NCBI RefSeq assembly: GCF_000143415.4
Contig: NW_003314310.1
Span: 676,611 to 740,610, forward strand
Source: Selaginella moellendorffii
Taxonomy: Eukaryota > Plantae > Lycopodiophyta
Length of the DNA stretch: 64,000 nucleotides
Direction of reading: 5' to 3'
Part shown: one piece after another, positions 21,949 through 60,872 of the stretch
Position numbering within the stretch: the stretch's first letter is position 1
Layout of the letters: every line of letters starts with the position of its first letter
Program-made: the position numbers and the translations under genes
Notes under the pieces: model-generated
Seen by the model: only the letters and a program-made list of their open reading frames with translations
The model's database searches: none
What the model was told of the DNA's origin: nothing

Positions 21949-22061
21949 TTTTAAAGGATGTATGTACATAGTTTTTGAGACTAGATAAGGGGCGAATATC
22001 CTCCTTCTCTCTTGTTTGAGTACTAGGGTTTTTAGTGTTTCTCGGGGTTTTCTCGAGCGCA

Positions 22062-40815: not shown

Positions 40816-42554
40816 AAGATTGGATGGAAAATGCAGCTTGGGTTTCATTGATGAAATATCTCATTTCATGGAACATCAAGATCAAAGCACACTTTAAAAG
40901 CACACTTAAAGAATCAAAAGCATGTAAACTTGTGGAAGTCTTGCATAAACACTACAAACTCTTTCTGATTGGATGCTTCACTGGATAATACTCAAAGCAC
41001 GAACTTGCTTCATCTGATAACCAAAAGCCTCCAGAGAGAAGAGTTATTCCATCCAATTTTGTTACAACCAAGCATTCAGGGTTTGGAGTAAAGATGTTTG
41101 GCCATTCTGGGAGAATTCCTAGTGCTGGCATTTATAAAGTTCCTATAAGAATTATGGAGTTCAGTAGACCTTTGGATGCATCATTTTTCCAATTATGGCC
41201 TTTATTATCATTGGATATATTAATTTCATCCAACACTTGTCTCACACATTATTTAATTATTGCTTATACTGATCACTTCTAATGATTAGACACTAAATTT
41301 CTCGTCTTTTTCTCTGTAATCTCTAACCATGTTTCTCTATTAGAACTATACCATGCCCCATTTAATGTGTTCCACCACCAAGTCCTCATAAGATCATTGT
41401 TGGTGAGCCAGAGTTTACTTAAATTGGACCTCTCCAACTCAACAGCTTTAATGCAACTCTCATCTTGTTGGAAGTTTTTACAATGGTGTTACGCTTGGTT
41501 GTTTTCTCCAGCACATTCAATTTGCTATCAGTACCCATTCCATTGCCAATTATCAACCATCCTACCACTCGCTCCTCACTACCTCTCACAATATAAACAT
41601 TGGCTTGGTGATCATGTCAAATCTCAAGATGGTGAGAGAATTTCTCAACCACCTTTTCAACTTTGGTACATCCTCTAGAAGTCCAAGGACATGGTGCTTG
41701 CTCCATAAAGAGCACTAGAGAAACATAAGGAACTTCGTTTCTTATAGTGGGGTTATATATGTGAGAGTATTAAAAGAACTGCATCACCTCCACGCTCTGC
41801 ATCATTGACCTCACCACCGTCCCAATCGAGAGCATCCCCCCCAGCAGCCAAGTCGTGCTGGAGTAACAGCTTAATAAGTGTGTTATATGTAATATTAGCA
41901 CTCACCTCTTAAAAAAACTCATGTCTTTAAGCTATTTCTGTTATATTTGTTAGATATTTGCAGCTGTTATGCTTGAGTTGAACTGTTTGCTGATGTAAAA
42001 CTCTCCAAGAAGAATAGTCTTTGCATATTGATGAAGTCTTTAGTGGCCACAAGTTTCTCCCTCATCTCTTCATATCCAAAATCATTCACAATCTGGGTGA
42101 TATATATAGAAAGTCTAGATAAAATTGCCATCATAAGCTGGAGGTAGTTTTGCTACCTAAAATATCCATCCCTCTAGAAGATCTTATATATTTTATTCTT
42201 TCTTCGTGCTCTAGTATGCTCTTTTTATTGTTACTAAGCATTCTCAAAGCCAAACACCCATGCAGTGATCAAGGAAGCCTGCCTTACCCCTTCTCATCCC
42301 ATACCAATCAAACCTGTGACACCACTGTCAAAGAAGAATTTTGAGCTTCTTCTAATTGGATTCAGGATGGCTTTATTAGTAACAATGTCCTAAATAGAGA
42401 AAAATTAATAGTAAACATTTACAAAAGAAATAGATTGAAGAATATCCTAAAATATATTTGGATGTTTCAGAAACGAAGAATTTTTATTTTTACAAAATAA
42501 TAGTTGTGGTAGTAACCCAAAAACATCAATTATTTTCTTTTAGAGACTTGTAAA

Positions 42555-42992
42555 TTAAATATTACAATTAAACAATACCATTGACATATTTATAGAAGAG
42601 TTTGTCTCCCTAAGCTCATCTCTTGAATATTCTACTTGTAAAGAAATATCACTTAGCGCAATTATACCTCCATAAAATAAACATATATCCCATATATCAC
42701 TAACTGCTTCTATGAAATCCCTAAATATAAATTCATGGGATTGCCTAACCCTGAAAAAACAACCCAAACTTCCAACTCGAGCCATATAATATCCCAGCAT
42801 AGATAAACCAAAAGCAAATCTATACCAAACTAGGTTCACACACCTACAATAGTCTTGATAATTTGTTCCTCTTTGGAATGTTGTAATGCACCTTTGGAAG
42901 TGTATAGAGGAGTATGAATGAGTCTTTTTAATGCAAAAAGAAAAAACAACCATGGCAATAAATACTAATATATGGGATTTTTGAGATTCCAT
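42555..42992 (-). CDS. Small secreted Cys-rich protein, unknown family (paralog A, 145 aa, intronless)
   Basis: Intact ORF in AT-rich DNA with a hydrophobic signal-peptide-like N-terminus. Clearly homologous to 56975-57427 (FQ.CITTF, YC.C, VWY.FAF, VGSLGCFF.VRQ, IW.ICL, SRDEL, MVLF.C). Confidence 0.8.
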   Translation of the reverse strand: MESQKSHILVFIAMVVFSFCIKKTHSYSSIHFQRCITTFQRGTNYQDYCRCVNLVWYRFAFGLSMLGYYMARVGSLGCFFRVRQSHEFIFRDFIEAVSDIWDICLFYGGIIALSDISLQVEYSRDELRETNSSINMSMVLFNCNI

Positions 42993-43779
42993 GCCTATAG
43001 AGATTTAATGGGTTTATAAATTCTTAAATTTATATAACTTTGTCCCGGGACAAATTTGTTGATAAAGGTTTCATTTTTTTTGTTTTTTCTAAATTATTAT
43101 TTGAAAATTAAAATCGTAGTTTCTGATTATAAAATTTTTCGTTCTAGAAATATATTATTTGATGGACTAAATTCATTATCAACCCACTATATATATTTTC
43201 AGCATTTACAGCCAAAAGAAGCTTGGAGGAGCTTCTCTCCTCACAACAAATTTCACCTCTCCTTGCTTCCTCCATTTGACCAATTATCAATGAACTAATG
43301 GATTCCATCAATCCAGAGGTTAGCCACTACTCTAGAATCCAAGTTACAATGAGTGGATCATGAATCTGGATGGGCAAAGTCTATGATCATGGGGCCACCT
43401 TAGACTATATCTTAGTTAATTCTTCTACAATAAGTCCAAGGCAATATAATCAATAGAATTTGGCTAATGCAGCAAAATTGAAGTCACCTTACTTGTACTA
43501 AATAAACTACCTAATGATTATACAAAGAATGCTGGTTACTATAGCAAACAATTTGATGATATCACCTACATTTCAATTGTTTTTAACTTTGCTTCATTTT
43601 AATTGGACAAGAGCACAATAAGAGGGCACTTTTCATGCCTATATAATTGGGAAGTGATCATGGTTTTAGTTATGTTCATTCTCATAATTATATATGATTA
43701 AAATTTTTAACCTTGCCTTACCTTTTGTAGCCTAATATACATACTTCTCTTAGTAGTTGATCTCTTATAAACCTTCTTG

Positions 43780-44300
43780 TCACAAACATTTATGAAATAG
43801 ATAGCTTCATCCATTTATTAGCAGTCTAAAATGCCTTGAAATGCTCTATCTAATTTTCTCTAGCGACTTCTTTTTACTTTTGGGCTTTGGATGTCTACCT
43901 CTATAGACTTCTTTATTAATCTTCTGTATTCTTGAGGATTGATACTGTCTTTATTGTGGTTGATTGGTTTTTCAAAATGACATTTTTCACTTTTATGGAT
44001 TGCTATAATATTATTAGTGATCAAAATCCTTAATTTATTTTCACCTTTTAGCACTAATTTCTTTCTTTCCTCCACATCAAAGGTAAGTTGTCAACTTCTT
44101 ATCATCCTCAAGTTGATGGGCAATTAAAGTATATTATTTAAACACTTAAAGTAATATTTCCCATCAACATGATTGAGTTTCTTCTTTCTAATAAGTTTAT
44201 TTATAACAATTCTTAACACTCTTTGTTATTCTTTGTTAATTATGGCTTTTATCCTCATTAATCATATTAATTAGTCATACCCAAGATGACAAATTACCAA
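43780..44300 (-). mobile_element. Possible decayed Ty3/gypsy reverse-transcriptase remnant
   Basis: AT-rich, stop-riddled region with KSEKCHF...IEVD..P.VK...RAFQG, resembling the gypsy RT 'K.EKC.F...GI.VD...P...K..RSFLG' segment. Confidence 0.25.
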
Positions 44301-45799
44301 CCAAGATTTGTCTTCTTTGTTATCACCACTTGCTCTTGTAACAATTTAAAAAGTCAAAACTTAAGTTTATGCTCTTTCATACTTTTGAGGTTACTTACCA
44401 ACTCAATCTTCCTTCATCCATGGATCTCTAAGTTGAGGAAATTTTATCAATACCAACTCACTTTGTTAATCACCTTCTTGATAATGTGGTGGAGCTATGC
44501 CATACATTGTAAGAATACATTTGATATTCTTGTATCACTAAAGGCATGGGGATTCATGTGCCAGGTTCTGGGCAGCAAGCTCTACGTTCTTGGGATGGAG
44601 CTGCAGAAGGCAAGTATATCAATGTGCAAATTGGAACCATAGTCTTCCCTGCCACGCCACCACTATATGAATTGACATCACAGCTTTGGGAGGGCAATGA
44701 AGGCTATTCTCCATCTGGTGATGGTGATGGAGTAGCAATGCCATTGATTCGTGTGTGAAACGAGTGGAACCACAACATTCGCAACTTAGCCTCCAGGTTT
44801 GCATTCTAAAACCAACTTCGTTTGTTAACTTCACACTCAAATGTTTCTCTGATTCAGGAAGAGTTCAGAGCATACGCTGAGATCATGGCATCCCAGAGAA
44901 TCACATCCCCTTCTTCAGGACAGCTTCTCAAAGGAGGTATGTGCGTGTGTACTCCCTTCTTCCACATTGTTTTCCTTTGAGAGCTTGTTCTCGTCTCTAG
45001 AGCTCAAAAAGCAAGGTTCTTCATCTCCAGTCCAATTTTCAGGCGCTCGTTTCGTTCAAGGTGACATACATTGATTAAGATTCAGGGAAGTCGAAGATTT
45101 TGCAAGGAGACTAAATGCCGACTGGCCCAGCCAAGACTTAGCATCTCGGAGGAATCAAGAACACAGGCTTTGGACGCCGACGACGACAAGCCCAACACAT
45201 ACTTATTGTCAGCCAAAGACACACGAGCTTGTTGGATGATCCCATTTCTAATTTTTCTAGTTCAAATAACTTTTTCTTCTTCTTTGTTTCTGAACAGCAA
45301 ATATTAAAGTTCTCTATGTACGTGTTAATTGAGGAAATATTCATTTAGTGGAATTTGGTTTTTGGATCTGGTTGGATTGCTCGAGTCCCTATTCGAGCTT
45401 CATACATAAAAAGACCACTGGCAGAGATTTTTGTGAAAACATCCAGTTGCCATGTTCTTCAATTTATCCAGATCCCTCACTCGAGTCCATCAACCTCCAT
45501 CCCTCCAGAACACATGTCGATGTCAGGCGGATCTCGGCCATGGAGAAGATCAATGGCTGGTTCTGACTCGAGCCCATCAACCTCCACGGCAGAGCAAGGT
45601 GACGTGTTTGGAAGTAGAGAAGGCCCTGGAGATTCAAGATAAAGATGAGTACCCCTCTTATCTCAGCTCGCCAGTATTTTGATCTTATTCATTGCCCAAG
45701 AAGCAAGTTTTGTTAGTGACTAATGTTGGTTTTAGAATGGGGCAAAAAATGGACCAGGAGTGATGCTTCTTGGGGTTAGGATCCCCAGGCAAGGCCATC

Positions 45800-47060
45800 T
45801 CACAGCACTAGCTTTTCAGCCTTGAGCGCCACAGACACCAGCCCAGGAATGCAGACCTGGAGGCCGACGTCCACAGAGTCACGCTTCGATCCAGCACGCT
45901 GTCAGAGAGAAATGCCTGCTGTGGGGCTAAGAGGGCATCCCAAGAGAACATGTCCTGCTCGGGGAGGCTCGTCAACCTTGCCATGTCGTGCAAACACCCG
46001 TCAAACGCGTCCTTGGCTCGGGCCAGGTCGCGGTCGGCACAAGCGGTGATCATGGCTATCGGCATGGCATCGAACAGCCTTGTGGCGTCATCTATGCAGC
46101 CGCAGTTTGCAAACACCACTAGCATCGCCGACCACGACACGAGGCTCCTCTCGGGCATGCCATCGAACAGGTGGTGGATCAAGCGTCATAGTCGGCGGCA
46201 GTGACACTATATAAGTTCAAGGCATCCAGGGCCTCATCGTCTATCATAGTGGGAGTGGGAGAATTATCAGCAGCTGGCAGCTCAACACATGGCCGCCACT
46301 GATAGTGTCCCATGACGCTGGACAACGATCAAAGATGTCTCAGCTAGTTCCTGGTTTTCTCAAGCCGATCTTACAGTCTTCCTCTGGGAACCTCCACAGC
46401 GTCAACAACGTTTCTCATCGTCTATTCCAGCCACACCAGCAACATTTCATGCCAGGAAGTCACGGGATCTCAACTCTAGACTTTCGAGGACTTGGAGGAG
46501 AGGAGTCGGGAGACAGGGAGAAGCTCTAGAGGCCGCTCAGCCACTAGTATATGGATCGCAAGACTTTCCAGGAACAGCGGCAGCAACGGTTCTTCCTTTG
46601 GCAAACATGAGTGGAAGTCTTGTTCCGGGAAGCGGCCAGGATCCAAGGTTGTTTCAGGAGCAGCGGAGACGACTGTCTGGGCAGCTGGAGATGGATCCCA
46701 GGAACTTCGCCGACGGCATGAGAAGGGAGGATTTCTGAGGCCAACTCTCGAATCGGTCTGAATCTGGGTGTGACGCTAGCGAGGGCCCCGAGCAAATTCC
46801 CCGGGAGCTCAAGCACCACTGTGTAGGCGTAAGGATGCAAGGCGGATTTGAGTGGAGCAAAGCACTATCACCGTCAACACAAAGTGTGTGAATTGCGGGG
46901 CCTCCTCCACAAGCCCCTGCCTCGAGTATGCAGCATGCAGCGTGTTCCACGCCACAAGGTTTTGATCAAACACCTCCTTCCCGATGCCGCCTCGTCTCGT
47001 GGAATCCGCTGCTTGTGGCATATGCCCAGCAAACCTTCACCTGGACGACGCTGCTCACGA
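45800..47060 (-). pseudogene. Degenerate PLS-class PPR pseudogene cluster
   Basis: LFDGMPERSLVSWSAMLVVFANCGCIDDATRLFDAMP, LPEQDMFSWDALL and KEVFDQNLVAWNTLHAAYSRQGLVEEA, with many deletions and frameshifts. Confidence 0.75.
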
Positions 47061-47399
47061 TGGGCTCTGAAGACCTTCCTGGCAGGCCGAATGGCAGTGG
47101 CGTCTCGCGCGGGAGAGGAAACATGTGGGTTAAGTCGATAATAAAATAATGCGAACCCGGTTGCTGAGGATTACGAATCACAAGTCCAAGGTTCGAATCC
47201 TTATCAAAAGAAACTAAAACGCACTGAGAAGAACCACATCAAATTCCCATGGACGCAAAGCCTTGTCGCCCACGAAAGAATGGCAGTGACAAGAAGAGGA
47301 AATTTTGCCTTGTCATTTAAAGGCACAAAGATTCTTTTGGCGCTCGACGGATGGATGCATTTCCTTCGACCCGCGCTCCACAGGTACTGCCACAGATTG

Positions 47400-47730
47400 G
47401 GACAATGCCAGGTTCACAGCACAAACTGTTCAGTAGAGCTCCTTTCAGGGTTGAAATCCTGCGGGAGCTCCAATGATTTAGAGAGGGGAATCGCGCCATC
47501 CAAAGCGGGGTTTGCTCCAATCCCTACACTTCTTGCAGCTTGATTGGCATGTATGGGAGGTGTGGCAGCCTGGTTGAGGCGAGGAGGTGTTTGACAGGAT
47601 GCCTTGCCACAATGTAGAACGCTTTCATCTTGGGACACGCAGAGAACTGGAAGCCTTCTCATGCCAGGGCTCTGCACCTGGATTCCCCTGCATCTTCGCG
47701 GCCATCAAGGCTTGCTCGGCTCTAGCGGCT
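47400..47730 (+). pseudogene. Degenerate PLS-class PPR fragment
   Basis: SLIGMYGRCGSLVEARR-(frameshift)-VFDRMPCHNV, plus LKSCGSSNDLERG and FAAIKACSALAA. Confidence 0.75.
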
Positions 47731-49979
47731 GAGACTCATTGGTGGGAAGATGATCAAACTGAAAGCTCTGGAACAAGGCATGAGAATCCCCTGCCGAGCT
47801 AAGTTTTGGAAGTGACGAGCCCGAGGTCTTCAAGCTCGGACAGCTACAGGAGGTTTAACGAGCTCTTGAGTAGCTGCCACAGCACCCAGACGCTCGTCTC
47901 TGGGAAGCTCACAAGCTACTTTTTGGTGTTTTTTGACACAACTACTTGCAACTTTGTAACTGTATTCATCTCTTTTCAAGGAAACCACAGGGTAGCTTTG
48001 TGTAGATCCTCCGGTTTTGCCACTGCCAAAGTGTAAACTTCCATCTAACGTTGTTCTCATGGCATTGCAAAAACAAAAAGAAGTTAGAGAAACCATAAAG
48101 AAAACTATAGAGAACATAGACCTGGAAGGTTGAAGCCTCTAGCCCTTTTGGGCGTTGTCCAGTTCGTTGAACATACATTTTGGTTAGAATAAACAGTTCA
48201 CGAACCGATGTCCGTTTCGTTGAACAGCAAACAGAACAAACAGTATACGAGTGAGCGTCTTTCACGCTATGATCACTGTGCTTTCATGGAGTTTTCATGG
48301 TCATTGAGGTTGGACCATTGTCATGTACGTCTTCAGCTGGATTGAGGTTCTGAAGATCGCAAGCGACGTTGTTTCTCAGCTCGCAGGTCTTGCGTTGAGC
48401 GCAGCAACAACATAACTCAAAGCGTTGACAATCACGTTGACACAAAATATCTCCAATTTCGTAGCATTATTCTTCTTGGCCGACATGGCGTTTTTCAGTT
48501 CTTATCGTCATTGAGCAGGCGACTTGGCTTGTTCATGGCAAGAAATTAGAACCAATTGAAACACACGCAAACCTGAAGCTAAGTATTGTCAACTTTCAAT
48601 GATCGTTTGTATTGTCCACATCCTTGGCCCATTGTTTTGCACTTTGATTTTCTGAGTTGCAATCATCTTCAAACGTTGAGAGTTTCAACACAAATTCCTG
48701 ATCGCCACTAGCCTTTCTTTCATTGTTGATCATACCTCAGCTCGTTGTAAGCAGCTTTGCTTTCTTTACTCGCTTATTGCTCATGCAAAGAAAAGCCCTA
48801 CCTAAACGAACTTACCGTGCGAAGCAGCCTACCTGGGCAGAGTGGACCAGGCAGCAACCCCAACCCCAACCCCAACCCCAAGACATCTCGTCCGTGACGT
48901 CTACCATCACTGCTCTAGCCCTTCAACAATGAACCCTAAACTTGGCAGCAAAAAAAGGGGAAAACGAAAACAACTGGTCCAAACGAAGTAACTTAATTAG
49001 TTGTCACGGGGATGAGGAATTCTCGGACAGCCTGCTGGATGGCTTGTGGACACTTGTGTTGTACTTTTGGTGGTCCTAAGCAAATTGAAAGAGCACAATA
49101 TCCACCTTGGGGAGAAAGAGCCATGATCATGAATTTGATGTTTCTAGCATTGTGTTCACGAGATTTGATCTTTCTTACTGATTAAACATTTTTTTGGCTT
49201 CATCTTGTGCTATAAAGAACTTTTTAAGATGGGGAAGTGGACTTTGCACAATGTATGTAATGAAAGGTGTCAAAGACACTTTAGAAATTGACTTCAAGGA
49301 GTCAAGATTAAAAATTCCAAAGTGCAATGGTTATATTAATAGAAATTAAAACTACTCGAGAATAAGCAGTGGGATTGAGATAGATAAAGTGTCTTTAACA
49401 GGTTTCATCCACAACACCATGTCTACATCTCCAATCTGCATGAAGCTCGCCAGCAAAATGCATTCCTTGTCCACAGCCGAGTAGGAGTTAAACAATTCAC
49501 AAGCTTCTTTAACGAGTAGTCACAAAACTTGCTTCTTGCCATGCTTGTGAGAGATTTATAACATTCAGTTAGATCATCTGGCAGTCCAGATCTCTTTCAG
49601 TGTCTTTCCTTAGATCATCCGAGCTAGAGTCGACTGGTTCAAGTCCACCTCAAGGCTTTCGGCTGGTGACATGACCTCACACAATGTCTTGGTGTCTAGC
49701 AGCTCATTGAAAAACTTCAAACAGATTTGCTAAAGCTTAAATTAGGGTTATGTTGGAAAAGTTTGGACATAAAAGAAATGGAATGAATTTGCTCTCTTGA
49801 GGTGGAGTAATGGTAATCATTCTTCTTTATGATCTTGATTATAAACGGTTTGCTTGTTAAGAAATATAATCATTTTCCACCTCTCCAATTTCTTGATTAA
49901 TGGCTAGGACTAGAATTCTATGATGGGTCATGCATTCTCCTTGTAATCTTGTGATACACCCAAGTTTTCATTCCTCTAA

Positions 49980-50160
49980 GACAACAAGAGATCCCTTCTA
50001 TTCAAATAGACAACACAGTGTGGAAAGTGGCAAACACAAAGACGACAAGAGATCCCTTCTATTCAAATAGACAACACAGTGTGGAAAGTGGCAAACACAA
50101 AGACGACAAGAGATCCCTTCTATTCAAATAAACAACACAGGCAAACACAAGAGATGACAA
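49980..50160. repeat. 61-bp tandem repeat, two full copies plus a deleted third copy
   Basis: GAC(A/G)ACAAGAGATCCCTTCTATTCAAATAGACAACACAGTGTGGAAAGTGGCAAACACAAA at 49980-50040 and 50041-50101, with a partial copy from 50102. Confidence 0.9.
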
Positions 50161-50684
50161 ACTTGAAACATTATGTAGTTCAAAGAATGGCACCACCATC
50201 TTGTGATCGAGCAAGTGAGAAGTGTAACTCACAGCATGTAGAGTTTGTAAATTCTCTTCTGGCCCCCAGATTTTATAATATTCCTCTAGAATAGTATCAC
50301 AGGACTCAAAACATAAAACAAACAATATCATTTACACCCTAAACCAACCCAGCGAAGGGTAATTGTTTGGTTATAAAGGCCTAGTTCATTTACAAAATTC
50401 TGCAAAAAGTTTTTCCAAATGTCAAAAATTCAATAGGTTACATTCTTCACAAAAGTGTTTGCATTTCATATTAAATACACATGCTGATATGTTATGAAGG
50501 CCACGGACTGGATCTGGAGGACCTCCATCTTCATATAGTGATGCTGGATCCTGAACGCTATCGTCCAAAGAGAGCTCTCCTCTATTTGAAGACGTAGACA
50601 ATGCAAGGAGGAAAAATCATTTTTCAAACAAGATAACCAAAGTTAAAAAGTTTTCTGTTTAGGTAAGGGTTTTTCTGAGTGGAA

Positions 50685-52050
50685 ATGGCGATAACAGGTG
50701 ATAGAGTTGTGAAGCTGGTGGGAAGAGCCCTCCAAGCCAGAGGATCTCCAGGGGAGAGGCCACTCACAGTCCTGATTGGCGGCACCCAGGTAGACCTCCC
50801 TTTCCTCCTCGCCAAGGTGAAAGATTTTGGTGGGTACACCAAGGCCAGTGGTGCCAGGAAGTGGGGCACTGTGGCCACCTCCATGGGCTTACCCCCGCAT
50901 TGCGGCCCCAGCGTCAAGCTCGTCTATCTCAAATACCTCAAGAGCTTGGAGAGTGGCCACATCTTCAATGCAAATGCCACCAAAAATGTGGAGGCTCCTT
51001 CACTCGCATCCACTGCTGCTCTTCCAGAGGCTCTCTCCTATCTGAGAAGATTGGCTCTAGATCCAGGGAATGCCACGCACAGCGCTCCAGAGAATGGTGA
51101 GTTTCGAGCAACTGTGAAGGGGGTCTTGGGCGGCCTCCGGAGGAAAGAGGAAGAAGAACAACACCTCCATCACCACCATGTAGAGGTATAGTGTATAGTT
51201 TAGAGTGTGATCATTCGACTCTCTCACTTACGTGAGTATACAGCGACCAGGACGGCGAGGAGTGAGTTCCATAACTTCCAAGTACAGCCTTCGTTCCTAC
51301 AGGCACGAAAATGGCCAGCTCTTATCGCTCCCGACGACCAAGAAAGTTTCTATCCGCATAGGACCCAACTTCCAAGCTCAAGTTCCTGCCGTTGTGACTG
51401 GGAGTGACGAGGATTCGACGCTCTTTTCCGGTAGAGTAGTGTGGCCGCGAGGGAAGGAAGTCGGCACTGGTAGTAGTAGTAATAGTATTTGCGTGGAGGG
51501 AGGATCATGTGTGAAGCGGCGGATCGAGGAGCAACGCAGGAAGCTGGAGCTGGAGCTTGGAGAGGAAGTTTTTCGGGAGTGGGGATTCAACAAAATGGGA
51601 GAGAGTTTGGTGGAGTCAGCCAAGTGGAGCAGGCAAGAGGAGGCCGAGTTTACTGCTATTGTGAAGGAGTGCTGCCAAGGAGACAAGCTCTGGCCCGAGC
51701 TCCAAGCTTCTTTTGCTGGAAGGAGGAGTCGGGAAGATTTGGTAGACTACTTCTTCAACGTCTTCGTGCTGAGAAAGAGAGCCGTCCAGAACAGGAGCCA
51801 CGCATTTGATGCCGGTTCATGGCCGTCCGGGGGTATCTTGGAAGAGTTTGACAGCGATGAGCTTCTGTCGGAAGAAGTGGCGATCCAAAACTTTAGTTCT
51901 CTTGGCGATGGATTTGGATCGGAGTCCACCCGGCCGGCACTAATCCTCCAAGAGGCTAAACCGTGTGTGAAGCAATGCCAAGTCCCTTACGCAGTTCCTC
52001 CAGCATCTGGTGTTCCTGAAGCAAAGTCGTGTATTAAGTGCTCCTGCTGA
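50685..52050 (+). CDS. ARID/BRIGHT + ELM2 (+SANT-like) domain protein, plant ARID1/ARID2-like (2 exons, intron 51186-51243)
   Basis: ARID: VDLPFLLAKVKDFGGY...KWGTVATSMGL....SVKLVYLKYLKSLE. Linker YLRRLALDPG. ELM2: IRIGPNFQAQVP...VWP. Then LELELGEEVFREWGFNKMGE...WSRQEEAEF and SREDLVDYFFNVFVLRKRAVQNR. Confidence 0.88.
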
Positions 52051-53699
52051 GTAAAAATGAAGGCATTTACAAATTAGAAGTACTTTCTGCAAGAGTATAT
52101 ATTATTTGAATAAAAGTTTGAGGAGTAATTTCGTCCAACTTAGGTTTATATTTTAATTTTTAATGAACCTTTCAAAATTGTTGCGCTTGTGCTATTATTG
52201 AGTAGGTATTCAGCTGCTTGAGCACTTAGCTGATCACGCTCTAGGCACCTTCGATCATACTCGAGCAACAGCTAGGGCGCAGGTGCTACAAAGCTCCAGG
52301 CGGATGCTGACTACCCAGCGCACGGAAGGAAGGAAGGAGCTTGGTACAGGGTGTGCTGGCTCGAGGAAGGATCGATCGGGGGACTCAAGACCTCCTTTTC
52401 AAGGCAACTCTACCCCATAGAACTTTACGCAGTTGGCACACAAACAAACTTTGGGATGACATAAGGATCCAAACAGCACAGTTGAAAATCAATTTGGGGA
52501 GAATCTAAGCTATATTTCTAGACTTTGTGACGGGATGCTTAAGATCATGAATCGGAGAATACAAATGGTGGAATATGTTAGAATATACTTGGTGGGAAAA
52601 TTATAAATAGATGAAATTATTTAAAATTTATAAACACATCCAAAATTGAAATTGAAATAAAAAGTTCACTTATTATACCCAATATCAAGTTCATCAAAGC
52701 TTTGTTGTCAGGAAGCTTTGATACTAATTCTCCTACTCCATCTTTGATCATTAAAGAGAATAAACATAAGCTAAACTGGCTGCTCATTGATGGTGCAAAA
52801 TCAAGCTGCTTCCTTCCCCCACCTTCTTTCACTGTTGAGCTCCCAATACAGCCATGACCACACCCTAACAACTTTTTGTCTTTGTTCCTAGCTCTAAAAA
52901 GTATAAACTTACTGAAGTTGCTGAGCATGGCTTAGGATCGTGGCTTGCTTCTAAGGCTGGAATGTCCAAGAGATGCTGCTAGAGAAATCTGACCAGCTGT
53001 GCTGGGAATGCAGAGTGCACTAAAATTTAAAACAAATACTTGGTAAAGATGTTAAACTCCTGTTTAAAAACAATTCAAGGACTATTTTTCTACAGTCTTC
53101 ACTGGAAATAGAGAGGAAGCCGCTTGGGCATGTGTACAAAATCCTTGTGCAGAAGGGCATGCTTGCCTTGAATTCCACCAGTGGCTAGAGTTGGTGATTA
53201 CTGTTTGCTTAGATTAATCCAGAGAGAAAGCCCAAGCTTATTATCAAACCTGAAGTGGAGGCAGAGCAGGACGACAATTTATGATCCTAGTAGTGACTCC
53301 TCAAGGTCAATAGAAAAAAATGCCCCAAAACTATACAATCAAATCAATTGCATTCCTCCTCTTAGCCAATGTGCTAGTCTTCCATTGGCCAAGTATAACA
53401 TCTACAAAAATTTTCTTTTGACCATATACTGATCCTCTCCTAGGCCTATGATTTGATGGCTGCAAGCCTTTGTTTATTATAAAATATATAAAAGTATTTT
53501 CCCTTTCAGAAGATGAAAAGGTGATGACAATAAGTTAGATATCTATTAGGTGATTATAGATTACCATAAGAAACTAAAACTCTTATATAACCACCAACAT
53601 AATTCTTGATAACCATGACTAAAATAAAACCTAAAATTATAGCAGAAACATTAGTGATTGTAGAATCTTGATGAACTAGTTGCAACTTTATATATAATT

Positions 53700-54565
53700 A
53701 CCAAATGTTTGAACTAAATTCGAAACCATAACTTTGAACTAAAGCAAGGGACTTTAAGAGTTATTATAGTTTATAAAACACCATTGTAGGAACTAATACA
53801 TTCTATCTCTAAGTTTGTATGTCAGCCATCCTCTGAGGCTATTGTTAACTAAAACTCATGATCATTAACAGAATCACCCTTTATGTTTTTCTTTCGGTCA
53901 ACTTCCAAGACCTATGTTAACTTAGACTCACATCCTTCATTCTTATAAAAGTTTTAAAGACAATTTATAAAAGTTCAAATATAAAAGGAAAAGGTTTATG
54001 AACAACAATGCACCCTTTTTTCCAATTGCTTAATAGTTTTGAAATACTTGGGGTTAAACATCTTTGGGTTTGAGTGGTATTGAGTAGGTAACCTCATAAG
54101 AAGTCCAAATTCAGGAGCTTACATTTGGTATTAGAGAGGTCTTAAGTCTAAATTTGTTGGCTAACTAAAGGAATTACATCATATATTGAGATTAATATTT
54201 GGTAGTTTAGTTTTCTCTAGCTGAGTTATACCCGAGGGGTAAAGTGTTAAGAGAGTGGGGCTCTCGGGAAGTTATGACTTTCAGCTTTTATTCATGAAGC
54301 GTGAACTTGTAAAGAAGCATAGTGAATTATAAGCAACTAAAGATAATAACTCATAAGAGTTCAAATATAAAAGGAAAAGGCCTATGAATAATAATGCACC
54401 CCCTTTTCTAATTAGTTAAGAGTTTTAGAAAATAACTTAAAAGATGATACATAGAAGTTTAAATATAGAGGAAGAGGGTTTACTTCATTTTTTTTTCTAA
54501 TTAGTTAAGGGTCTTAGGATATTTAGGGTTAAATGTCTCTAAAAGTCTAAATTCAAGAGTTTTCA
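53700..54565 (+). mobile_element. Decayed non-autonomous LTR element (TRIM-like)
   Basis: Direct repeats AGTTCAAATATAAAAGGAAAAGG..TATGAA.AA.AATGCACCC at ~53971 and ~54357. Both repeat blocks end AAGTC(C/T)AAATTCA(G/A)GAG..T(A/T)CA (54123, 54565). PBS-like TGGTATTAGAG at 54126-54136 and purine tract GAGGGGTAAAG before TG at 54245. The left boundary is uncertain. Confidence 0.45.
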
Positions 54566-56974
54566 ATTCTCATCCAACATTGTATATGGGAGGTTGAACT
54601 CACTCCATTTGTTCTCCACACCTTCCTTAACCCTAAGAAAAAAAAAAGAAAAAAAGTTTTGAAGTATTGGCTTTATTTATATTTACTATACTTATCCTTA
54701 CTCTATAATTTATATTTCACTATCACATTTGTTTGGCCTCACTACATTGGGTTAGATGTTTTTATATAGTTCAGATTTGTTATGAATCCTCACTCCACAA
54801 TCTATGTCATTTATCCTTGCTTAACTATCATACTTGCTTGTCCTCACTCTATCATTAGGGTTAGACTCTTATTTGTCCCCTCTACCCCCTCCTCTGAAGA
54901 AAAAAAAGTTTAAGGTGTCAGAGCAAAAAAGAGAAAATTAAAAACATTAAGGAAGAAATATTATAGAAGAAGAAAAAGTGGATAAAGAAATATCAAAAGA
55001 GTAATTTTTAACTATTGTCAATGGGAAAATAGGGAAATAAGAAGAAGGAAATATGCATAAAGCTTAGATAATAAAGAATCTACTATTATATGAGATTCCA
55101 TCCAAGTAGAAAGGTTGGATAAGGGATATCATGTTATAAAATATTTTAGCCACTAGAAGATAAGGAAGAGACTTATATTGCTCAACTTCTTCAACACACA
55201 ACTCAACACTTGAGATAAGAAAAATAATAGAAAAACTCCTTAGTAGTAGTGGTAAGGTAAAGAGATTTAATAGCACTTATAACCAAAGAAATATACTTAG
55301 CTTGAAACTTTGGTAAAAGTGACTTAACCCTTGGAACAAAGGAATAATGAATATGAGAATTGATCAAAGACTTTACTAACAAAACAAAACAAATTCTCTT
55401 GCTTCACATATATGCTTAGTATTCAAATTAGTATAAAGACAATAGAAATACTAAATTCAACACCAAATTAAGAATGAGAATTATAAGAGTCATAAATTAT
55501 CGACATACAAGGAGAAAAAAATGCTATAAATAAGGAAAAAATTAAAAAATATGGAAGTGGTTCAAGCTAAAATATAAAAAAAGGTTGCAAAAGAGTAGAA
55601 GGCAATAAAAAAAGATTATATGACAAATTGAAGGATTGACACCTAGTTTGCAAAATCTATAATTTGTCCTCATAGTTATTTCTAAAGTAATCAAATTTTT
55701 CATCATTGTCAAGAATCCATTAAATTATATACATCATCTTCCCATAAGCTTGATCCTTGAACATTCTCCAAAAACTGGATTGCATCATTTATAATTTTTT
55801 AGTTGATGTCACAATCACACTCCATATTAGCAAGAGATGAATAACACTATATAATCAAGTCCCATGGAAGTTGGTCATGGCAACACATGAAGAATGGGTG
55901 TAACACTAATATGATTATGCCCTATAACACCAAAAGCTCAATCCAATGGAACAACAATAGCAGCCTCAAATAACAATACTTCTTCATCAATAATGGCATA
56001 ACATTGTAGAAGAAGAGAATGTAATAGAGATTGAAAAGGAAAAACTAATCTAATAACTACAATCCTAGATTTGGTGAAAAACTAACATAAATCTAGATCT
56101 AAAAAAGAATGAAGGAATAAAAATAAAAAGCACCATTTTGAACACTAAACAAAGCATTACTTAAAGGCTTTACCCTTTATAGTATTATGAGTGATGAGTG
56201 AAGATATATCTTACATGAATAAAACCTAATATATATACTTGAGTATGTGGATTTCATATAATCAAAATTACATGCACTAATACAAGGGATTACATTGAGA
56301 GAAAAATTATAAGGGTTCTACAAGACAAGAGTATCAATTGAGGCCTCACTATAAGGCCAACTAAGGTCTTTGTTTGCTTCATTTTCTCAACTCATACAAA
56401 CTTTTTAGAATTGTATCTTGGAAAAAAAAACTCTTTTAAAACTCTTTATGAAGGAGACTCTGTTTCATGTTAAAAATGAGGACCCTTTAGAATAAGTGTT
56501 ACACACTTCTATTTGGAAATCTTAGCAAATAACATGATTTTGTGTTATATATAGTTATGTGAAATGAATATATTCACTTCTTTCTTCTTAACTCTCTAAT
56601 AAATATTTTACTTTATGATTGATAATGCTCTAATTCAGTTTTATCAAGCTACTACTGTCCTAAATAGAGCTATTATCAAATACCAACAAGCTCACAATAT
56701 GTAAAGTCTTATAAAATCTAGATATCATCTACTTTTGACAAAACAATTGCAATATAGGACTCAAAATATCATAATTAGTGATGCTAAAGTATTTAAAAAA
56801 TTTTAAAAATAGAAAGGGAAAGGAAGAAACAAAAATAGAGTAGAAAAAAAAACTTTCTGAATCATGATATAACTTTGTCAACAACTTTGTCTTATTTCTT
56901 AGAATTTATAAGCTTTAATAATTTTAAAACTTTGGTCATTTTTATAGCTATAAGCTTCAATCATTTTTATAGCT

Positions 56975-57427
56975 ATGAAATTTAATTTATCTCTTATAAT
57001 TAAGCTTACTGTTATGATTATTTTCACTTATTGGAAAGATACTTACTGTTACTCTGTTGGATCCTTTCAAAATTGCATTACCACATTTCACATAAGAACA
57101 AATTATGATAGCTATTGTTCATGTATAAGCCAAGTGTGGTATAATTTTGCATTTAGCTTTACACCAGGTATTTATACTGCCCAAGTTGGAAGTTTAGGTT
57201 GTTTCTTTGTGGTTAGGCAATATCATGGATTAACATTTAATGACTTTCTAGAAGCTACAATGAACATATGGAATATATGTCTTGTAAATAATGACTCGGG
57301 AGGTGTTGTTAGACTACATGATGGGTCAATGTGCTTACGAGTGGAGCATTCAAGAGATGAGCTATTAGAGTTAGACTCATATACAAAATCATTGATGGTT
57401 CTCTTTTCATGTGATATTAATATTTAA
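56975..57427 (+). CDS. Small secreted Cys-rich protein, unknown family (paralog B, 150 aa, intronless)
   Basis: Intact ORF with a signal-peptide-like N-terminus. About half of the mature residues are identical to 42555-42992 by manual alignment, including six Cys. Confidence 0.8.
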   Translation: MKFNLSLIIKLTVMIIFTYWKDTYCYSVGSFQNCITTFHIRTNYDSYCSCISQVWYNFAFSFTPGIYTAQVGSLGCFFVVRQYHGLTFNDFLEATMNIWNICLVNNDSGGVVRLHDGSMCLRVEHSRDELLELDSYTKSLMVLFSCDINI

Positions 57428-58177
57428 TTATGTTAATTTCTATAATAAAAATAGTATTAAATTCTAAGAAATGAAGCTTCTGAAGCAATGACAATCTTCT
57501 TTCATAGTATTACTATGATGTCATTATCAATGTCATATCAGTGAGCTATCAGTAGTATATATGTTTAAAGGACACTACTGGATATACATAACTATTATAA
57601 AGACTCACACTAAAGTCTAATTTCCATTTTGTAGATTTAATATAAATATATAAGTAGCTTGAATTATTTTCCATTGAAAATAAGCACTAAGATTCATACA
57701 ATAGCTAGGTTTGGATGTCTTCTTCTGCAGCTTGCCAAAAAAAACCAAAGAACCAAGGGGAGGATTAGATAAAAAGCAATCCTTCCCAATGGAGTTGCCA
57801 AATGTTGAGAAGGGGAGCCTCTCAATGGTGGGGAGAACATTTTCATACTATAAAATCCAGTTTAAACATCTCTTTTATGTGAATTCTTTACGGTAGAAAA
57901 TGGGGAAGAAGGGGAATATACCTTTGTGCCCTAGCATCACCTTATGCCCTAAGAATATTCTGATAGTGGAATATTCTAAGGAATCCTACTTAAAGCTCTA
58001 TATCCTTCTAAAATTAATGTTTTGGCTTTATATTAGATTTTGAAGATGATTGAAAAAAAGTGTTAGTGCAATATAGATATTCGAAAATATAGTCTTTGTG
58101 ATCAAGTTTTATGTGTTCATTTTGCATTTTACAAATTTCAATATTATATATATAGGCATGATATTCAACACTTAGGT

Positions 58178-60872
58178 GGCACAATGGAGAAACAGGCCCG
58201 CGGTTTCGGCTAGAGAGGTCGGTGCGTCAAGGCTGCCCATTGGCTCCGTACCTCTTCCTCATGGTTGCGGAGGCTCTAGGGGCATTCCTGGCAGAGGGTG
58301 AAGGAATCAGGGGCGTGGAGTTACCCAAGGAAAGACAGCAACTCCCCGGAACTCAAACGGTGGGAAGGGACCTGCTCGATAGCGCGTTTGCGGATGATAC
58401 AGCACTCTTTCTGCTAGGTACCAAGGCTAACCTGGACACTGCAAGGGCCAGGCTAGAGGCCTTCAATGCAGCAGCAGGAGCGGCCATCAACTGGAACAAG
58501 TCGATAGGAATCAACTGGGGGGAATCTGACATAGAGGCATGGGGACGCGACATCGACTTTCAGTGGCTACCACCAGGGGAGGACACACGCTACCTGGGAA
58601 TTCAGGTAGGAGGTGAGTTCAAAGCTTCCACGCAGGACTCAGCACTGCTGCGGAGGACCAGAACAGCGATTCAGAAATGGGTGCCACGGAAACTGGGACT
58701 GCCGGCAAGGGTGGTGGTGGCGAAAAGCATCGTGTTGCCGTGTACGTGGTACCACCTCTCAGTATGGCCGGTTCTAGAGACTACACTCAAGCGCATAAGG
58801 TCCATGGTGCGCACGTATGTGTGGAAGGGAGCGCTGGTCAGTGGCCGGACGATGGCCAAGGTGGCATGGCAGTCGACAGCGAGACCACGAGTTCTAGGCG
58901 GCTTGGGGATAATCGACCCAAGCGACATGAGCAAGGCGCTGAGGTACAAAGTCATACTAATGGGCCTTCAACCGGGGGCCCAAGCTTGGAAGCTCTTGTT
59001 CAGGCAGAGCATGCTAGCCATCAGGCCGAAGCATGGATTCGCAAGATTGTGGGATGAGGACCCCCGCTGGATGTTCGCGGAGGGCCAAACACAGGTGGTA
59101 GGGGGAGGCCAGTTGGTCCAGGGTCTCCATCGGCTCTGGAAGTCATTTCCAGTGACGCAGGTCATCCCGAACAGGGCAGAGGACTGGCTGAATCAGCCGC
59201 TATTTTTCAATGAGTTGTTCAAGGCAGGAGACAGGACACTAGGCCGAGAGAACCACTACACCATATGGAGGCGGGTACACCAAGGAGGCTTCAGGACAGT
59301 CAAACAACTAGTTGGAGTGGTAGATCCGGATCCACAGAAATCATCCCGGCGCTTCCAAGTTTTTGGGCCAGGGAAGTGGCGGGACGTGAAGTGGGATCTA
59401 CTGAAGCTACTGCGGGCAGTGACAGAGGCACGGACAGTGGATAAATGGCCAGCAAGAAGACTACACGCTGGGGACTTTGTGGCAATTCAAAGGGAGGAAA
59501 CGTCGGATGGCGAGCAAGTACCACTTGGGAGATGGACTCGAGCATTCACGATGCCAACCCCAGCATGGAATGAGGGGGAGATTGAGGTGTGGTTTGTGAC
59601 AGAACCAGAACAGAACCTCGGTAGGCCTTTTCGTGTAGTGAGAGGCGACACACTCCTCAAGGCAGGGAATCCCCAACAGATGCCGCAGGTCACGGACGAT
59701 GAAGTGAAAGGACGAATCCGGGTTCTAAGACAGACAGCAACTCGGACAGAAGTGGTAGAGTCACCATGCTGGTTAGAAGGAGAGGGACGGCTAGTATGGT
59801 GGAGGAAAGAGTTAATAGAAGACCTGGACTGGGACCCAGCAGTGTGGAGACGCGGGGCGAACGGCTTCTTCACTTACGAGGTCAAGGACGCGCGGAACGG
59901 TTTGATGGTGAACAGGGAATTTGAGAGAGAAGAAATCCCACGACTGTGGCAAAAGTGGATCACGCTAGGAGTGGAGGCGGACCAGGTGATTGACAATACT
60001 ATGGCGTTCTGGAAACTACCGATCCAGGAAAAATCGAAGGTAACCTCTTGGCTCGTGGCGACGAATGGGCTGCCAGTAGGCCAGCGATTTCAAGCGGAGA
60101 ATGCTCGCAAGTGTCCGGAATGCGGGGAACTGGAGACGGTCACACACCTCCTCTGGGACTGTGACGTGGCCAAGGAGACGTGGCGGCAGGTAGCAAAAGC
60201 GACGAGGGAACTAGGGGACAAGCAGGACTTCGAAATTCGAGAAGGGGATGTCACCCAATGGTTTCCAGAGGCAAGGGGACCATGCACAGGAGCAGCTTGG
60301 CGGAAGATCGGGTGTTGGGGACGCTCAGGATGGGGCACCCGAGTTAGGTGGGACGCGGTAGGCGCCGAAGTTGGGACTACAGTGTGGGAGGCCCTTGGAC
60401 GGGCGAGATGGGAGGTATGGCGGGCTTCCGGGGTACAGGCACTCTGGGAGGCTCGGAACCGCAACCACTTCGAAGGGCAGTGCGCTCGGATTTCAGCGAT
60501 CATGGCGATTTGGTGGAGGCTCACACTAGCTGCTATCCGCTTGAGGGATACGCTGCTCCAGGAGCATGGGAAAAACAGGGAGGCACTCACAGCTTGGCGA
60601 CGACTATGGACTCCGTGCTACAGAACTGAACACGAGGGGGAGGTCAAGTGGAAATGGAGACCTTCGGACACGGTAACAAAGGAGGCTCGACGTGGTGATC
60701 TGGCGCTGGATGCACTGCGGAGGCGACGACCACAGCAGCCACGATTGGAGGGCAGCGATCACTACTAGGTGGAGAATTGCAGGACAGCGTAGTTGAGTGA
60801 ACAGCGCTAAGGGATTCTTGCTTTTTTGTATCAGTCCCTAAGGGACTTGGAGAAATGTACATACACGTTGCA
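58178..60872 (+). mobile_element. 5'-truncated LINE (L1/Tx1-like non-LTR retrotransposon) with 13-bp target-site duplication
   Basis: GC-rich island in AT-rich DNA. TCAACACTTAGGT flanks both ends (58165-58177, 60873-60885). ORF2 remnant is intact to its stop at 60768. Confidence 0.93.
58180..60768 (+). CDS. LINE ORF2 C-terminal part (RT domains 4-7 to zf-RVT), N-terminally truncated
   Basis: NGE.GPRFRLERSVRQGCPLAPYLF, FADDT (YADD-type), INWNKS, RYLGIQVG, KVAW....PRVLGGLGI and zinc knuckle CPECGELETVTHLLWDC...W. Confidence 0.88.
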   Translation, partial: HNGETGPRFRLERSVRQGCPLAPYLFLMVAEALGAFLAEGEGIRGVELPKERQQLPGTQTVGRDLLDSAFADDTALFLLGTKANLDTARARLEAFNAAAGAAINWNKSIGINWGESDIEAWGRDIDFQWLPPGEDTRYLGIQVGGEFKASTQDSALLRRTRTAIQKWVPRKLGLPARVVVAKSIVLPCTWYHLSVWPVLETTLKRIRSMVRTYVWKGALVSGRTMAKVAWQSTARPRVLGGLGIIDPSDMSKALRYKVILMGLQPGAQAWKLLFRQSMLAIRPKHGFARLWDEDPRWMFAEGQTQVVGGGQLVQGLHRLWKSFPVTQVIPNRAEDWLNQPLFFNELFKAGDRTLGRENHYTIWRRVHQGGFRTVKQLVGVVDPDPQKSSRRFQVFGPGKWRDVKWDLLKLLRAVTEARTVDKWPARRLHAGDFVAIQREETSDGEQVPLGRWTRAFTMPTPAWNEGEIEVWFVTEPEQNLGRPFRVVRGDTLLKAGNPQQMPQVTDDEVKGRIRVLRQTATRTEVVESPCWLEGEGRLVWWRKELIEDLDWDPAVWRRGANGFFTYEVKDARNGLMVNREFEREEIPRLWQKWITLGVEADQVIDNTMAFWKLPIQEKSKVTSWLVATNGLPVGQRFQAENARKCPECGELETVTHLLWDCDVAKETWRQVAKATRELGDKQDFEIREGDVTQWFPEARGPCTGAAWRKIGCWGRSGWGTRVRWDAVGAEVGTTVWEALGRARWEVWRASGVQALWEARNRNHFEGQCARISAIMAIWWRLTLAAIRLRDTLLQEHGKNREALTAWRRLWTPCYRTEHEGEVKWKWRPSDTVTKEARRGDLALDALRRRRPQQPRLEGSDHY

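What the first reader, a model, noticed from the sequence alone, without database searches (positions are those of the whole stretch)
42555..57427. Pair of intact paralogous genes for an unrecognised small secreted Cys-rich protein family embedded in transposon/pseudogene debris
Seen: two intronless ORFs, 42555-42992 (-) and 56975-57427 (+), ~14 kb apart and oppositely oriented. Each has a signal-peptide-like N-terminus. They share the mature core YS..FQ.CITTF...TNY..YC.C...VWY.FAF....G.Y.A.VGSLGCFF.VRQ.H...F.DF.EA...IW.ICL...GG...L.D...L.VE.SRDEL...MVLF.C.I with six conserved Cys and roughly 55% identity by hand alignment. Both frames stay open and indels are in-frame, while the surrounding AT-rich DNA is stop-riddled, which implies purifying selection. 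They are very AT-rich, unlike the GC3-rich genes in the left half. Inference: the Cys spacing does not fit defensin, LTP, thionin, RALF, snakin or kiwellin patterns that I know. The 'G-C-strand...helix-I...C....GG-strand' layout loosely recalls fungal KP4/Ecp2-like secreted folds, so this could be a lineage-specific antimicrobial or signalling family, possibly horizontally acquired or TE-dispersed.
Basis: partly seen in the sequence, partly recalled or inferred. Interest (0 to 1): 0.75.

Follow-up and report, generated by a model that had tools for sequence, protein, structure and literature searches.

The report
Orphan spikemoss secreted-protein gene pair
Two unannotated reading frames in the spikemoss Selaginella moellendorffii are real sister genes for a small, probably secreted six-cysteine protein with no detectable relatives anywhere; one is kept intact on both chromosome copies and the other is decaying, so this is an ordinary lineage-specific gene family and not a fungal-toxin import.

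Summary
Both ORFs exist as described: pA at 42555-42992 (-), 145 aa, and pB at 56975-57427 (+), 150 aa. They are 49% identical overall (E 1e-44) and 56% in the mature part. Six Cys are conserved, and each has a signal-peptide-like N-terminus. The window is Selaginella moellendorffii scaffold GL377614.1, and no gene is called over pA in either haplotype.

Paralog similarity is confined to the CDS plus an 18-nt upstream element. dN/dS is 0.45 (p 3e-4), all indels are in frame, and under simulated drift about 1% of lineages stay open. So the pair was protein-coding for most of its history.

On the other haplotype (GL377568.1), pB is intact, but pA carries a 10-bp frameshift deletion and a CGA->TGA nonsense codon. 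The "intact" pA allele has itself lost three residues shared with pB, through CpG decay. pA is therefore dying.

Both genes lie in AT-rich, CpG-depleted blocks (o/e 0.07-0.2), which explains their composition without gene transfer.

No relatives turned up in Pfam, PDB, 1.84 billion protein representatives, or viral and metagenome contigs. The KP4/Ecp2 idea has no support, and the fold stays unknown (pLDDT 35-43). An NdhH resemblance was tested and rejected.

The scan noted similar-sounding orphan secreted families elsewhere in this genome. Whether they are kin could not be tested.

The parts
56975..57427 (+). pB: single-exon CDS of 150 codons plus stop. This is the better-kept paralog and is intact on both haplotypes.
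   Evidence: ORF list. The hap2 allele at L004 16788-17240 is open, with 5 nt differences in 453 and no indels.
56975..57049 (+). pB signal-peptide-like N-terminus (codons 1-25, ...KDTYC|YS).
   Evidence: Hydrophobic maximum at residues 3-17. Three of the four allelic amino-acid changes fall here (K10M, D22E, Y24H). The cleavage site was read by eye and not predicted by a tool.
57050..57424 (+). pB mature part, 125 aa, with six family-conserved Cys. Predicted secondary-structure order is alpha-alpha-beta-beta-alpha-beta-beta-beta.
   Evidence: Alignments A1 and A3. The secondary structure is the same in both low-confidence AF2 runs. Allelic divergence is 0.4% in the core.
56874..56974 (+). pB promoter-like leader: the shared 18-nt element TTTGTCAACAACTTTGTC (56874-56891) and a TATA-like TTTATAAG (56905-56912).
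   Evidence: Four-way alignment of upstream regions, A4. This is the only non-coding similarity between the paralogs.
42555..42992 (-). pA: single-exon CDS of 145 codons plus stop. It is open in this haplotype only and is eroding.
   Evidence: ORF list. The hap2 allele at L002 4920-5356 has a 10-bp deletion and a TGA.
42915..42992 (-). pA signal-peptide-like N-terminus (codons 1-26, ...KKTHS|YS). The hap2 10-bp deletion corresponds to window 42914-42923 (codons 24-27).
   Evidence: Hydrophobic maximum at residues 7-21. Alignment A2, columns 180-189.
42636..42638 (-). pA codon 119: CAA (Gln) here and TGA (stop) in hap2. pB has CGA (Arg) at the aligned position, so the inferred ancestor is CGA, deaminated on opposite strands in the two haplotypes.
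   Evidence: Alignment A2, columns 474-475. The pB sequence reads TTA CGA GTG.
42783..42797 (-). pA codons 66 and 70: CTG/ATG here and CCA/ACA in hap2. The inferred ancestors are CCG (Pro) and ACG (Thr), matching pB's Pro and Thr.
   Evidence: Alignment A2, columns 307-308 and 319-320, and alignment A1.
42993..43070 (-). pA promoter-like leader: the shared element (TTTATCAACAAATTTGTC here, TTTGTCAACAACTTTGTC in hap2; 43049-43066) and TATATAAAT (43028-43036).
   Evidence: Alignment A4 and the sequence itself.

Best explanation
pA and pB are the two local members of an unannotated gene family seen so far only in Selaginella moellendorffii. They arose by an old inverted duplication. Each is a self-contained, intronless unit: a short promoter-like leader with a shared 18-nt element and a TATA-like box, then a cleavable signal peptide, then a mature domain of about 120-125 aa with six conserved cysteines. 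Most likely the product enters the ER, forms up to three disulfides, folds into a small alpha+beta domain and is released to the apoplast. The inferred role is as a defence or signalling protein, typical of fast-turning-over plant secreted protein families. The family was held by purifying selection for most of the time since the duplication. Today only pB still looks maintained. pA is being lost, with a null allele on one haplotype and an eroded but still open allele on the other. Both genes sit in AT-rich, CpG-depleted DNA, which suggests long-term cytosine methylation. That mutation pressure, and not foreign origin, sets their AT-rich codon usage and drives the decay of pA. Shown here: homology, the coding constraint, the allelic states, the CpG pattern and the absence of detectable relatives. 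Inferred: secretion, disulfides, fold class, biological role and methylation.
For: Homology: 49% identity, E 1e-44. Similarity is limited to the CDS plus about 18 nt upstream. Codon position 3 is the least conserved (0.59 against 0.71). NG86 dN 0.37, dS 0.82, ratio 0.45; Fisher p 3e-4. Drift simulated to the observed distance leaves a frame open in only 0.8-1.4% of lineages. All four to five paralog indels are multiples of three. pB is intact in both haplotypes, and its mature core shows the lowest allelic divergence of the 3.4-kb alignment (0.4% against 4-12% upstream). The pA hap2 allele has a 10-bp frameshift and a nonsense codon. Three TG/CA allelic dinucleotide differences resolve to ancestral CpG codons that match pB's residues. 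CpG o/e is 0.07-0.22 in the AT-rich blocks and 0.19 in both ORFs, against 0.75-1.0 in the neighbouring genes. The organism and the two haplotype scaffolds are identified.
Against: No transcript or peptide evidence could be obtained. Neither ORF, nor anything at least 50% like them, is in the 15-billion-protein collection, and no gene is called over pA in either haplotype's annotation. Heavy CpG depletion is the mark of silenced DNA, not of typical Selaginella genes. pB's allelic differences are 4 non-synonymous to 1 synonymous, and the low-divergence zone continues downstream of the CDS, so present-day selection on pB is not proven. This haplotype's pB has a Lys inside the hydrophobic core of its signal peptide. 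AlphaFold confidence is very low (pLDDT 35 and 43), and the language-model 'recognition' is below the level that 91% of known families reach. The signal peptide was judged by eye only.
Confidence: 0.6

Rival explanations
1. Both ORFs are now dead relics. The family was once a coding gene family but has lost function in this species. pB is open on both haplotypes only because too little time has passed, and the whole AT-rich, CpG-depleted block is silenced DNA.
For: pA is clearly decaying on both haplotypes. CpG o/e is 0.19 in both ORFs, the same as in the surrounding blocks. There is no gene model over pA and no database protein for either ORF. pB's allelic changes are 4 non-synonymous to 1 synonymous, and one puts Lys into the signal-peptide core. 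Low allelic divergence extends beyond the pB CDS.
Against: pB has no indel and no stop on either haplotype, while its upstream 1.5 kb has 10 indels and 4% mismatches. The mature core has 2 differences in 378 nt. Long-term constraint since the duplication is strong.
Confidence: 0.25
2. The ORFs are passenger or own genes of a mobile element or an endogenous virus. That would explain the AT-rich codons and the dispersal.
For: The genes sit in AT-rich, repeat-like, CpG-depleted DNA. A LINE lies 0.8 kb downstream of pB on the same strand. NCLDV-like genes have been reported in this species (PMC4083422).
Against: Paralog flanks share nothing beyond 18 nt. No terminal direct or inverted repeats of 40 nt or more flank either ORF. 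The LINE (58178-60882) is absent from hap2 while pB is present, and it is GC-rich and 5'-truncated, so pB is not its ORF1. There are no relatives in IMG/VR, PHROGs, JGI metagenome contigs or 1.84 billion protein representatives. ORF composition equals that of the local DNA, as expected after long residence.
Confidence: 0.07
3. The family is a horizontally acquired fungal KP4/Ecp2(Hce2)-type toxin or effector fold, or a DUF26/Gnk2-like lectin, diverged beyond sequence recognition.
For: The ESM Atlas feature search for pB lists fungal hypothetical, Hce2 and Kp4 clusters at 0.78-0.88. The predicted alpha+beta element order is compatible with a small sandwich. Earlier scan notes report KP4/DUF26-like low-confidence folds for other orphan families of this genome (not tested here).
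Confidence: 0.05
4. The core of the protein derives from a fragment of the plastid ndhH gene, that is, a nuclear plastid-DNA insert recruited into a new ORF.
For: NCBIfam NdhH hits pA residues 47-99 at E 0.036. The PDB profile search lists NdhH chains at E 1.4. An HMM built here from 97 cyanobacterial NdhH ORFs scores pA at 13.5 bits, which none of 5000 shuffles reach.
Against: pB scores -1.1 bits, reached by 10% of shuffles. The hap2 pA piece scores 5.9 bits against 10.5 for the same span here, because two of the matches (L66, M70) are recent haplotype-specific CpG mutations whose ancestral states match pB. The match does not extend beyond about 50 residues, and Pfam Complex1_49kDa is not hit. 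The hit was found only after screening tens of thousands of families.
Confidence: 0.03

Closest known systems
Under-annotated plant families of small secreted cysteine-containing proteins, such as the DEFL/CRP families of Arabidopsis (own knowledge: Silverstein et al. 2007)
   Same: Short intronless or near-intronless genes. A signal peptide is followed by a compact Cys-stabilised domain. Local duplicates, birth-and-death turnover with pseudogene alleles, location in repeat-rich DNA, and absence from automatic annotation.
   Different: The mature part is much larger (about 120 aa against 30-80 aa) and Cys-poor (6 in 120). The Cys spacing matches none of the named CRP classes. No relatives were found outside this one species, and no expression data exist.
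Fungal KP4 killer toxin (PF09044) and Ecp2/Hce2 effectors (PF14856)
   Same: Size class, a secretion signal, mixed alpha/beta content, and a weak protein-language-model resemblance for pB only.
   Different: No HMM match, no fold match, a different cysteine number and spacing, and no support from pA. Membership was tested at the sequence level and not met.
Other orphan secreted-protein families that this scan noted in S. moellendorffii (s1-392293, s1-421160, s1-361251)
   Same: Same genome. Unannotated, AT-rich, small, probably secreted, a few intact copies plus dead ones, and no relatives in databases.
   Different: The scan's sequence look-up found no look-alikes. Kinship is therefore untested.

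Membership tests
KP4 killer toxin (Pfam PF09044) | Significant match to the Kp4 profile HMM | tested here: not met
   hmmscan against Pfam-A at E<=10 returned no Kp4 hit for the full or mature pA and pB.
KP4 killer toxin (Pfam PF09044) | KP4 alpha/beta-sandwich fold | tested here: inconclusive
Hce2 / Ecp2 effector domain (Pfam PF14856) | Significant match to the Hce2 profile HMM | tested here: not met
   No hit at E<=10. Atlas feature scores of 0.86-0.87 for pB are below the trust line, and pA gives none.
DUF26 / Gnk2 (Stress-antifung, PF01657) | C-x8-C-x2-C motif and a match to the profile HMM | tested here: not met
   The sequence shows C-x13-C-x-C, and there is no Pfam hit. The motif definition is from my own knowledge.
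NdhH / NuoD 49-kDa subunit | Homology shared by both paralogs and extending along the protein | tested here: not met
   pA scores 13.5 bits over about 50 aa only. pB scores -1.1 bits, at shuffle level. Part of the pA score comes from recent allele-specific mutations.
Secretory-pathway protein (cleavable signal peptide) | N-terminal n/h/c regions with small residues at -1 and -3 | tested here: inconclusive
   The hydrophobic core is 14-15 residues at positions 3-21. The putative cleavage sites are THS|YS (pA) and TYC|YS (pB). There is no second stretch of TM strength. No SignalP-type predictor was available.
Functional protein-coding gene | Purifying selection on the reading frame | tested here: met
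   This holds for the history of the pair: dN/dS 0.45, p 3e-4, in-frame indels, and P(open) about 0.01 per lineage. It does not hold for present-day pA.
Functional protein-coding gene | Transcription and translation | not testable with these tools
   No RNA-seq or proteome access. The ORFs are absent from the protein collection.
Transposable-element ORF | Copies share element termini or flanks, or match known TE proteins | tested here: not met
   Flanks are not alignable. There are no flanking repeats of 40 nt or more, no Pfam or PHROG hit, and the adjacent LINE is absent from hap2. Genome-wide copy number could not be measured.

The most novel reading that the evidence does not exclude
pB is a working, epigenetically gated gene, expressed only in a narrow stage or under attack, for a secreted protein with a fold that has no solved relative. 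The AT-rich, CpG-depleted blocks of the Selaginella genome would then act as a nursery in which several unannotated, species-restricted secreted-protein families are born, kept for a while and lost. That would be a plant counterpart of the 'two-speed genome' compartments of filamentous pathogens.
Probability: 0.15. Interest if true: 0.6.

Novelty: new member of a known kind. Interest (0 to 1): 0.3.

Why it matters
The family adds one more sequence-orphan, unannotated secreted-protein family to a lycophyte reference genome, and the two assembled haplotypes catch one member in the act of being lost. The three CpG sites that mutated on opposite strands in the two haplotypes give a clear local record of methylation-driven decay. 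They also show that the odd AT-rich codon usage needs no horizontal transfer. Practically, the result warns that S. moellendorffii gene sets miss small genes in AT-rich blocks, and it flags pB as the copy worth testing. It does not open a long-standing question, and no function can be assigned.

Tried and rejected
1. Homology searches all came back blank:
- Pfam at E<=1 and E<=10, full and mature proteins.
- PDB by sequence and by profile.
- Word-based protein search.
- HMMER profile against 1.84 billion representatives.
- Exact look-up.
- IMG/VR and JGI metagenome contig scans.
- PHROGs and NCBIfam.

2. Structure. AF2 with a 2-sequence alignment of the full protein and a 3-sequence alignment of the mature part gave pLDDT 35 and 43. 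Foldseek against PDB and VIA-wide gave only noise-level rows. No fold claim is made.

3. The ESM Atlas lead to Hce2/Kp4 for pB was not reproduced with pA.

4. The NdhH lead was followed by fetching cyanobacterial ndhH loci, building an HMM and running shuffles. It was rejected as chance.

5. A search for further copies next to an ARID paralog (L005) found none. P0076 could not be located.

6. The idea that pB is ORF1 of the downstream LINE was rejected, because the LINE is missing from hap2.

7. An NCLDV origin was considered. The paper on Selaginella NCLDV-like genes names other families, and there are no viral relatives here.

8. The scan's own index by sequence and by relatives was blank.

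9. Not done: a profile-profile comparison with Hce2, Kp4 and DUF26 alignments, because no tool-supplied sequences of those families were at hand and I did not type any from memory.


Full report
**Observation.** The ORF list shows both frames exactly as reported. pA is at 42555-42992 (-), 145 aa. pB is at 56975-57427 (+), 150 aa. BLASTP aligns them end to end at 49% identity, E 1e-44, and the mature parts are 56% identical. Six cysteines of the mature part are conserved (pB C34, C48, C50, C76, C102, C146), and each copy has further non-conserved Cys. Both N-termini have a 14-15 residue hydrophobic core followed by small residues before a conserved Tyr-Ser. No later segment reaches membrane-span hydrophobicity. 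The ORFs are 31% GC with GC3 25%, like their surroundings (29-32% GC) and unlike the genes to the left (47-57% GC). At the local base composition a 145-codon open frame has a probability of about 4e-6.

**Where this is.** A ribosomal-L1-domain ORF of the window is 98% identical to a Selaginella moellendorffii protein. Exact-protein look-ups place the window on scaffold GL377614.1 of GCA_000143415.2, with L003 100% identical to window 26865-47659. The allelic haplotype lies on GL377568.1 (L001, L002, L004). Genic DNA of the two haplotypes is 98.5-99.2% identical. No gene model covers pA in either haplotype. In hap2, pA lies inside the span of a long PPR gene model. Neither exact protein is in the 15-billion-sequence collection.

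**Is it coding?**
- Nucleotide similarity between the paralogs is confined to the CDS (72% over 220 nt) plus a short upstream patch. The flanks do not align, and no direct or inverted repeats of 40 nt or more bracket either ORF.
- Third codon positions are the least conserved (0.59 against 0.71 and 0.71).
- Nei-Gojobori gives dN 0.37, dS 0.82 and a ratio of 0.45 (0.40 for the mature part). The excess of synonymous change has Fisher p 3e-4.
- All paralog indels are multiples of three.
- When either ORF is mutated at random to the observed distance, with the local base composition, only 0.8-1.4% of lineages keep an open frame. That is about 1e-4 for both lineages together.
- The pair was therefore a protein-coding family for most of the time since it duplicated.
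- A shared 18-nt element (TTTGTCAACAACTTTGTC, identical in the hap2 pA allele and both pB alleles) lies 75-100 nt upstream of the ATG and is followed by a TATA-like box. This is gene-like anatomy. The statistical weight of one 18-mer is modest.

**The second haplotype changes the picture.**
- pB is open on both haplotypes. It has 5 differences in 453 nt and no indel, while the 1.5 kb upstream has 4% mismatches and 10 indels.
- Three of pB's four amino-acid differences lie in the signal peptide. The mature core has the lowest divergence of the 3.4-kb allelic alignment (0.4%), but divergence also stays low downstream.
- pA is different. Its hap2 allele has a 10-bp deletion at codons 24-27 (a frameshift) and TGA in place of codon 119. 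It also carries a 9-bp stretch (Asn-Asn-Pro) that this haplotype lacks and that matches pB's Asn-Asn-Asp.
- Allelic divergence in the pA CDS (2.3%) equals that of its flanks (2.7-3.8%).
- Three allelic differences are TG/CA dinucleotide pairs. With pB as outgroup they resolve to ancestral CpG codons: CCG (Pro66), ACG (Thr70) and CGA (Arg119). pB has the same Arg codon.
- Each of these codons deaminated on one strand in this haplotype (Leu, Met, Gln) and on the other strand in hap2 (silent, silent, stop).
- So the 'intact' pA has also lost three conserved residues and three codons since the haplotypes split. pA is being lost. pB is the only candidate for a working gene.

**Composition.** CpG observed/expected is 0.07-0.22 in the AT-rich blocks and 0.19 in both ORFs, against 0.75-1.0 in the neighbouring genes. 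Together with the double-hit CpG sites, this points to long-term cytosine methylation and deamination. The methylation itself is inferred, not measured. That pressure accounts for the AT-rich codons, so a foreign origin is not needed. It also raises the possibility that the locus is silenced.

**Relatives.** None were found.
- Pfam at E<=10 gives only a sub-threshold DUF4077 hit over the signal peptide of pA.
- PDB by sequence gives nothing, and the word-based search gives nothing.
- A HMMER profile of both proteins against 1.84 billion representatives gives no hit at E<=1e-3.
- IMG/VR and JGI metagenome contigs yield no confirmed locus. PHROGs gives nothing.
- Because annotated S. moellendorffii proteins are in that collection, no annotated paralog exists in this species either. 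Unannotated copies could not be searched.

**The KP4/Ecp2 idea.**
- The ESM Atlas feature search for pB lists fungal hypothetical, Hce2 and Kp4 clusters at 0.78-0.88. These are below the tool's 0.9 line, and the recognition value is below what 91% of known families reach. pA gives no usable hit.
- AlphaFold2 gave pLDDT 35 (full length, two sequences) and 43 (mature part, three sequences). Only the secondary-structure order alpha-alpha-beta-beta-alpha-beta-beta-beta was reproducible.
- The cysteine spacing (C-x13-C-x-C, then three single Cys) is neither DUF26's C-x8-C-x2-C nor KP4's ten-Cys pattern. Those family patterns are from my own knowledge.
- The idea is unsupported, but a fold-level resemblance cannot be excluded.

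**A side lead, tested and dropped.** Profile searches put NdhH (the 49-kDa subunit of the plastid NDH complex) at pA residues 47-99: PDB E 1.4 and NCBIfam E 0.036. I fetched cyanobacterial ndhH loci by a degenerate DNA pattern, extracted 97 full ORFs and built an HMM.
- pA scores 13.5 bits, which none of 5000 shuffles reach.
- pB scores -1.1 bits, which 10% of shuffles reach.
- The hap2 pA fragment scores 5.9 bits against 10.5 for the same span here.
- That difference arises because two of the 'matches' (Leu66, Met70) are the recent CpG mutations described above.
- A similarity that is missing from the better-kept paralog and is partly created by recent allele-specific mutations is chance, not ancestry.

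**Mobile-element and virus rivals.** A GC-rich, 5'-truncated LINE ORF (RVT_1 plus zf-RVT) lies 0.8 kb downstream of pB on the same strand. The LINE (about 58178-60882) is absent from hap2, where pB is present. The segment 57778-62756 is also inverted between the haplotypes. pB is therefore not the LINE's ORF1. The published NCLDV-like genes of Selaginella are other families (PMC4083422).

**Verdict.** This is a real, unannotated gene pair seen so far only in this species, encoding a probably secreted six-Cys protein. It has a clear history of purifying selection. One member is decaying, and the other is intact on both haplotypes but lacks expression evidence. My estimates are about 0.6 for 'pB is or very recently was a functional secretory-protein gene and pA is dying' and about 0.25 for 'both are now relics'. 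Transposon or virus, KP4-like transfer and NdhH origin share the rest. Earlier notes of this scan describe similar-sounding orphan secreted families in AT-rich blocks elsewhere in this genome. Whether they are the same family could not be tested.

Noticed in passing
window 57778-62756, compared with L004 17570-19863: The two S. moellendorffii haplotypes differ by an inversion of about 5 kb just downstream of pB. In this haplotype the inverted segment carries a 2.7-kb, 5'-truncated LINE (58178-60882) with an open 848-codon RT ORF at 58222-60768. The LINE is absent from the other haplotype.
   Followed up: partly
L002 1584-9814 (hap2), compared with L003 922-3114 and 7364-9764 (this haplotype): The public annotation models the PPR region inconsistently. 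In hap2 a single 929-aa gene spans 8.2 kb, and that span swallows the pA pseudogene. In this haplotype there are a 779-aa PPR gene and a separate 360-aa model on the opposite strand over PPR-like fragments (window about 44.5-46.7 kb).
   Followed up: no
window 42000-44000, 52000-58000 and 62000-64000: AT-rich blocks (29-37% GC) have CpG observed/expected of 0.07-0.31, against 0.75-1.0 in adjacent gene DNA. Allelic divergence reaches 4-12% with many indels, against 1-1.5% in genes. This is a sharply two-compartment landscape on a 10-kb scale.
   Followed up: partly
window 49978-50160: Three tandem copies of a 61-nt unit (98% and 70% identity to the first) lie just upstream of the ARID gene.
   Followed up: no
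window 50679-52050: An ARID-domain gene (SELMODRAFT_404866 on the other haplotype, 434 aa) has 54-55% identical paralogs on GL377642.1 and on this same scaffold. No pA/pB-like ORF accompanies the GL377642.1 paralog.
   Followed up: partly
window about 19800-29285, compared with L001 11519-20954: Left of the ribosomal-L1-domain gene the two haplotypes stop aligning by megablast. The L1 gene is modelled as 317 aa on one haplotype and 436 aa on the other. This suggests a larger structural difference or an annotation discrepancy.
   Followed up: no
window 43041-43056 (-): A perfect 16-nt palindrome, TTTGTCCCGGGACAAA, overlaps the 3' half of the shared upstream element of pA on both haplotypes. pB has no counterpart.
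   Followed up: no
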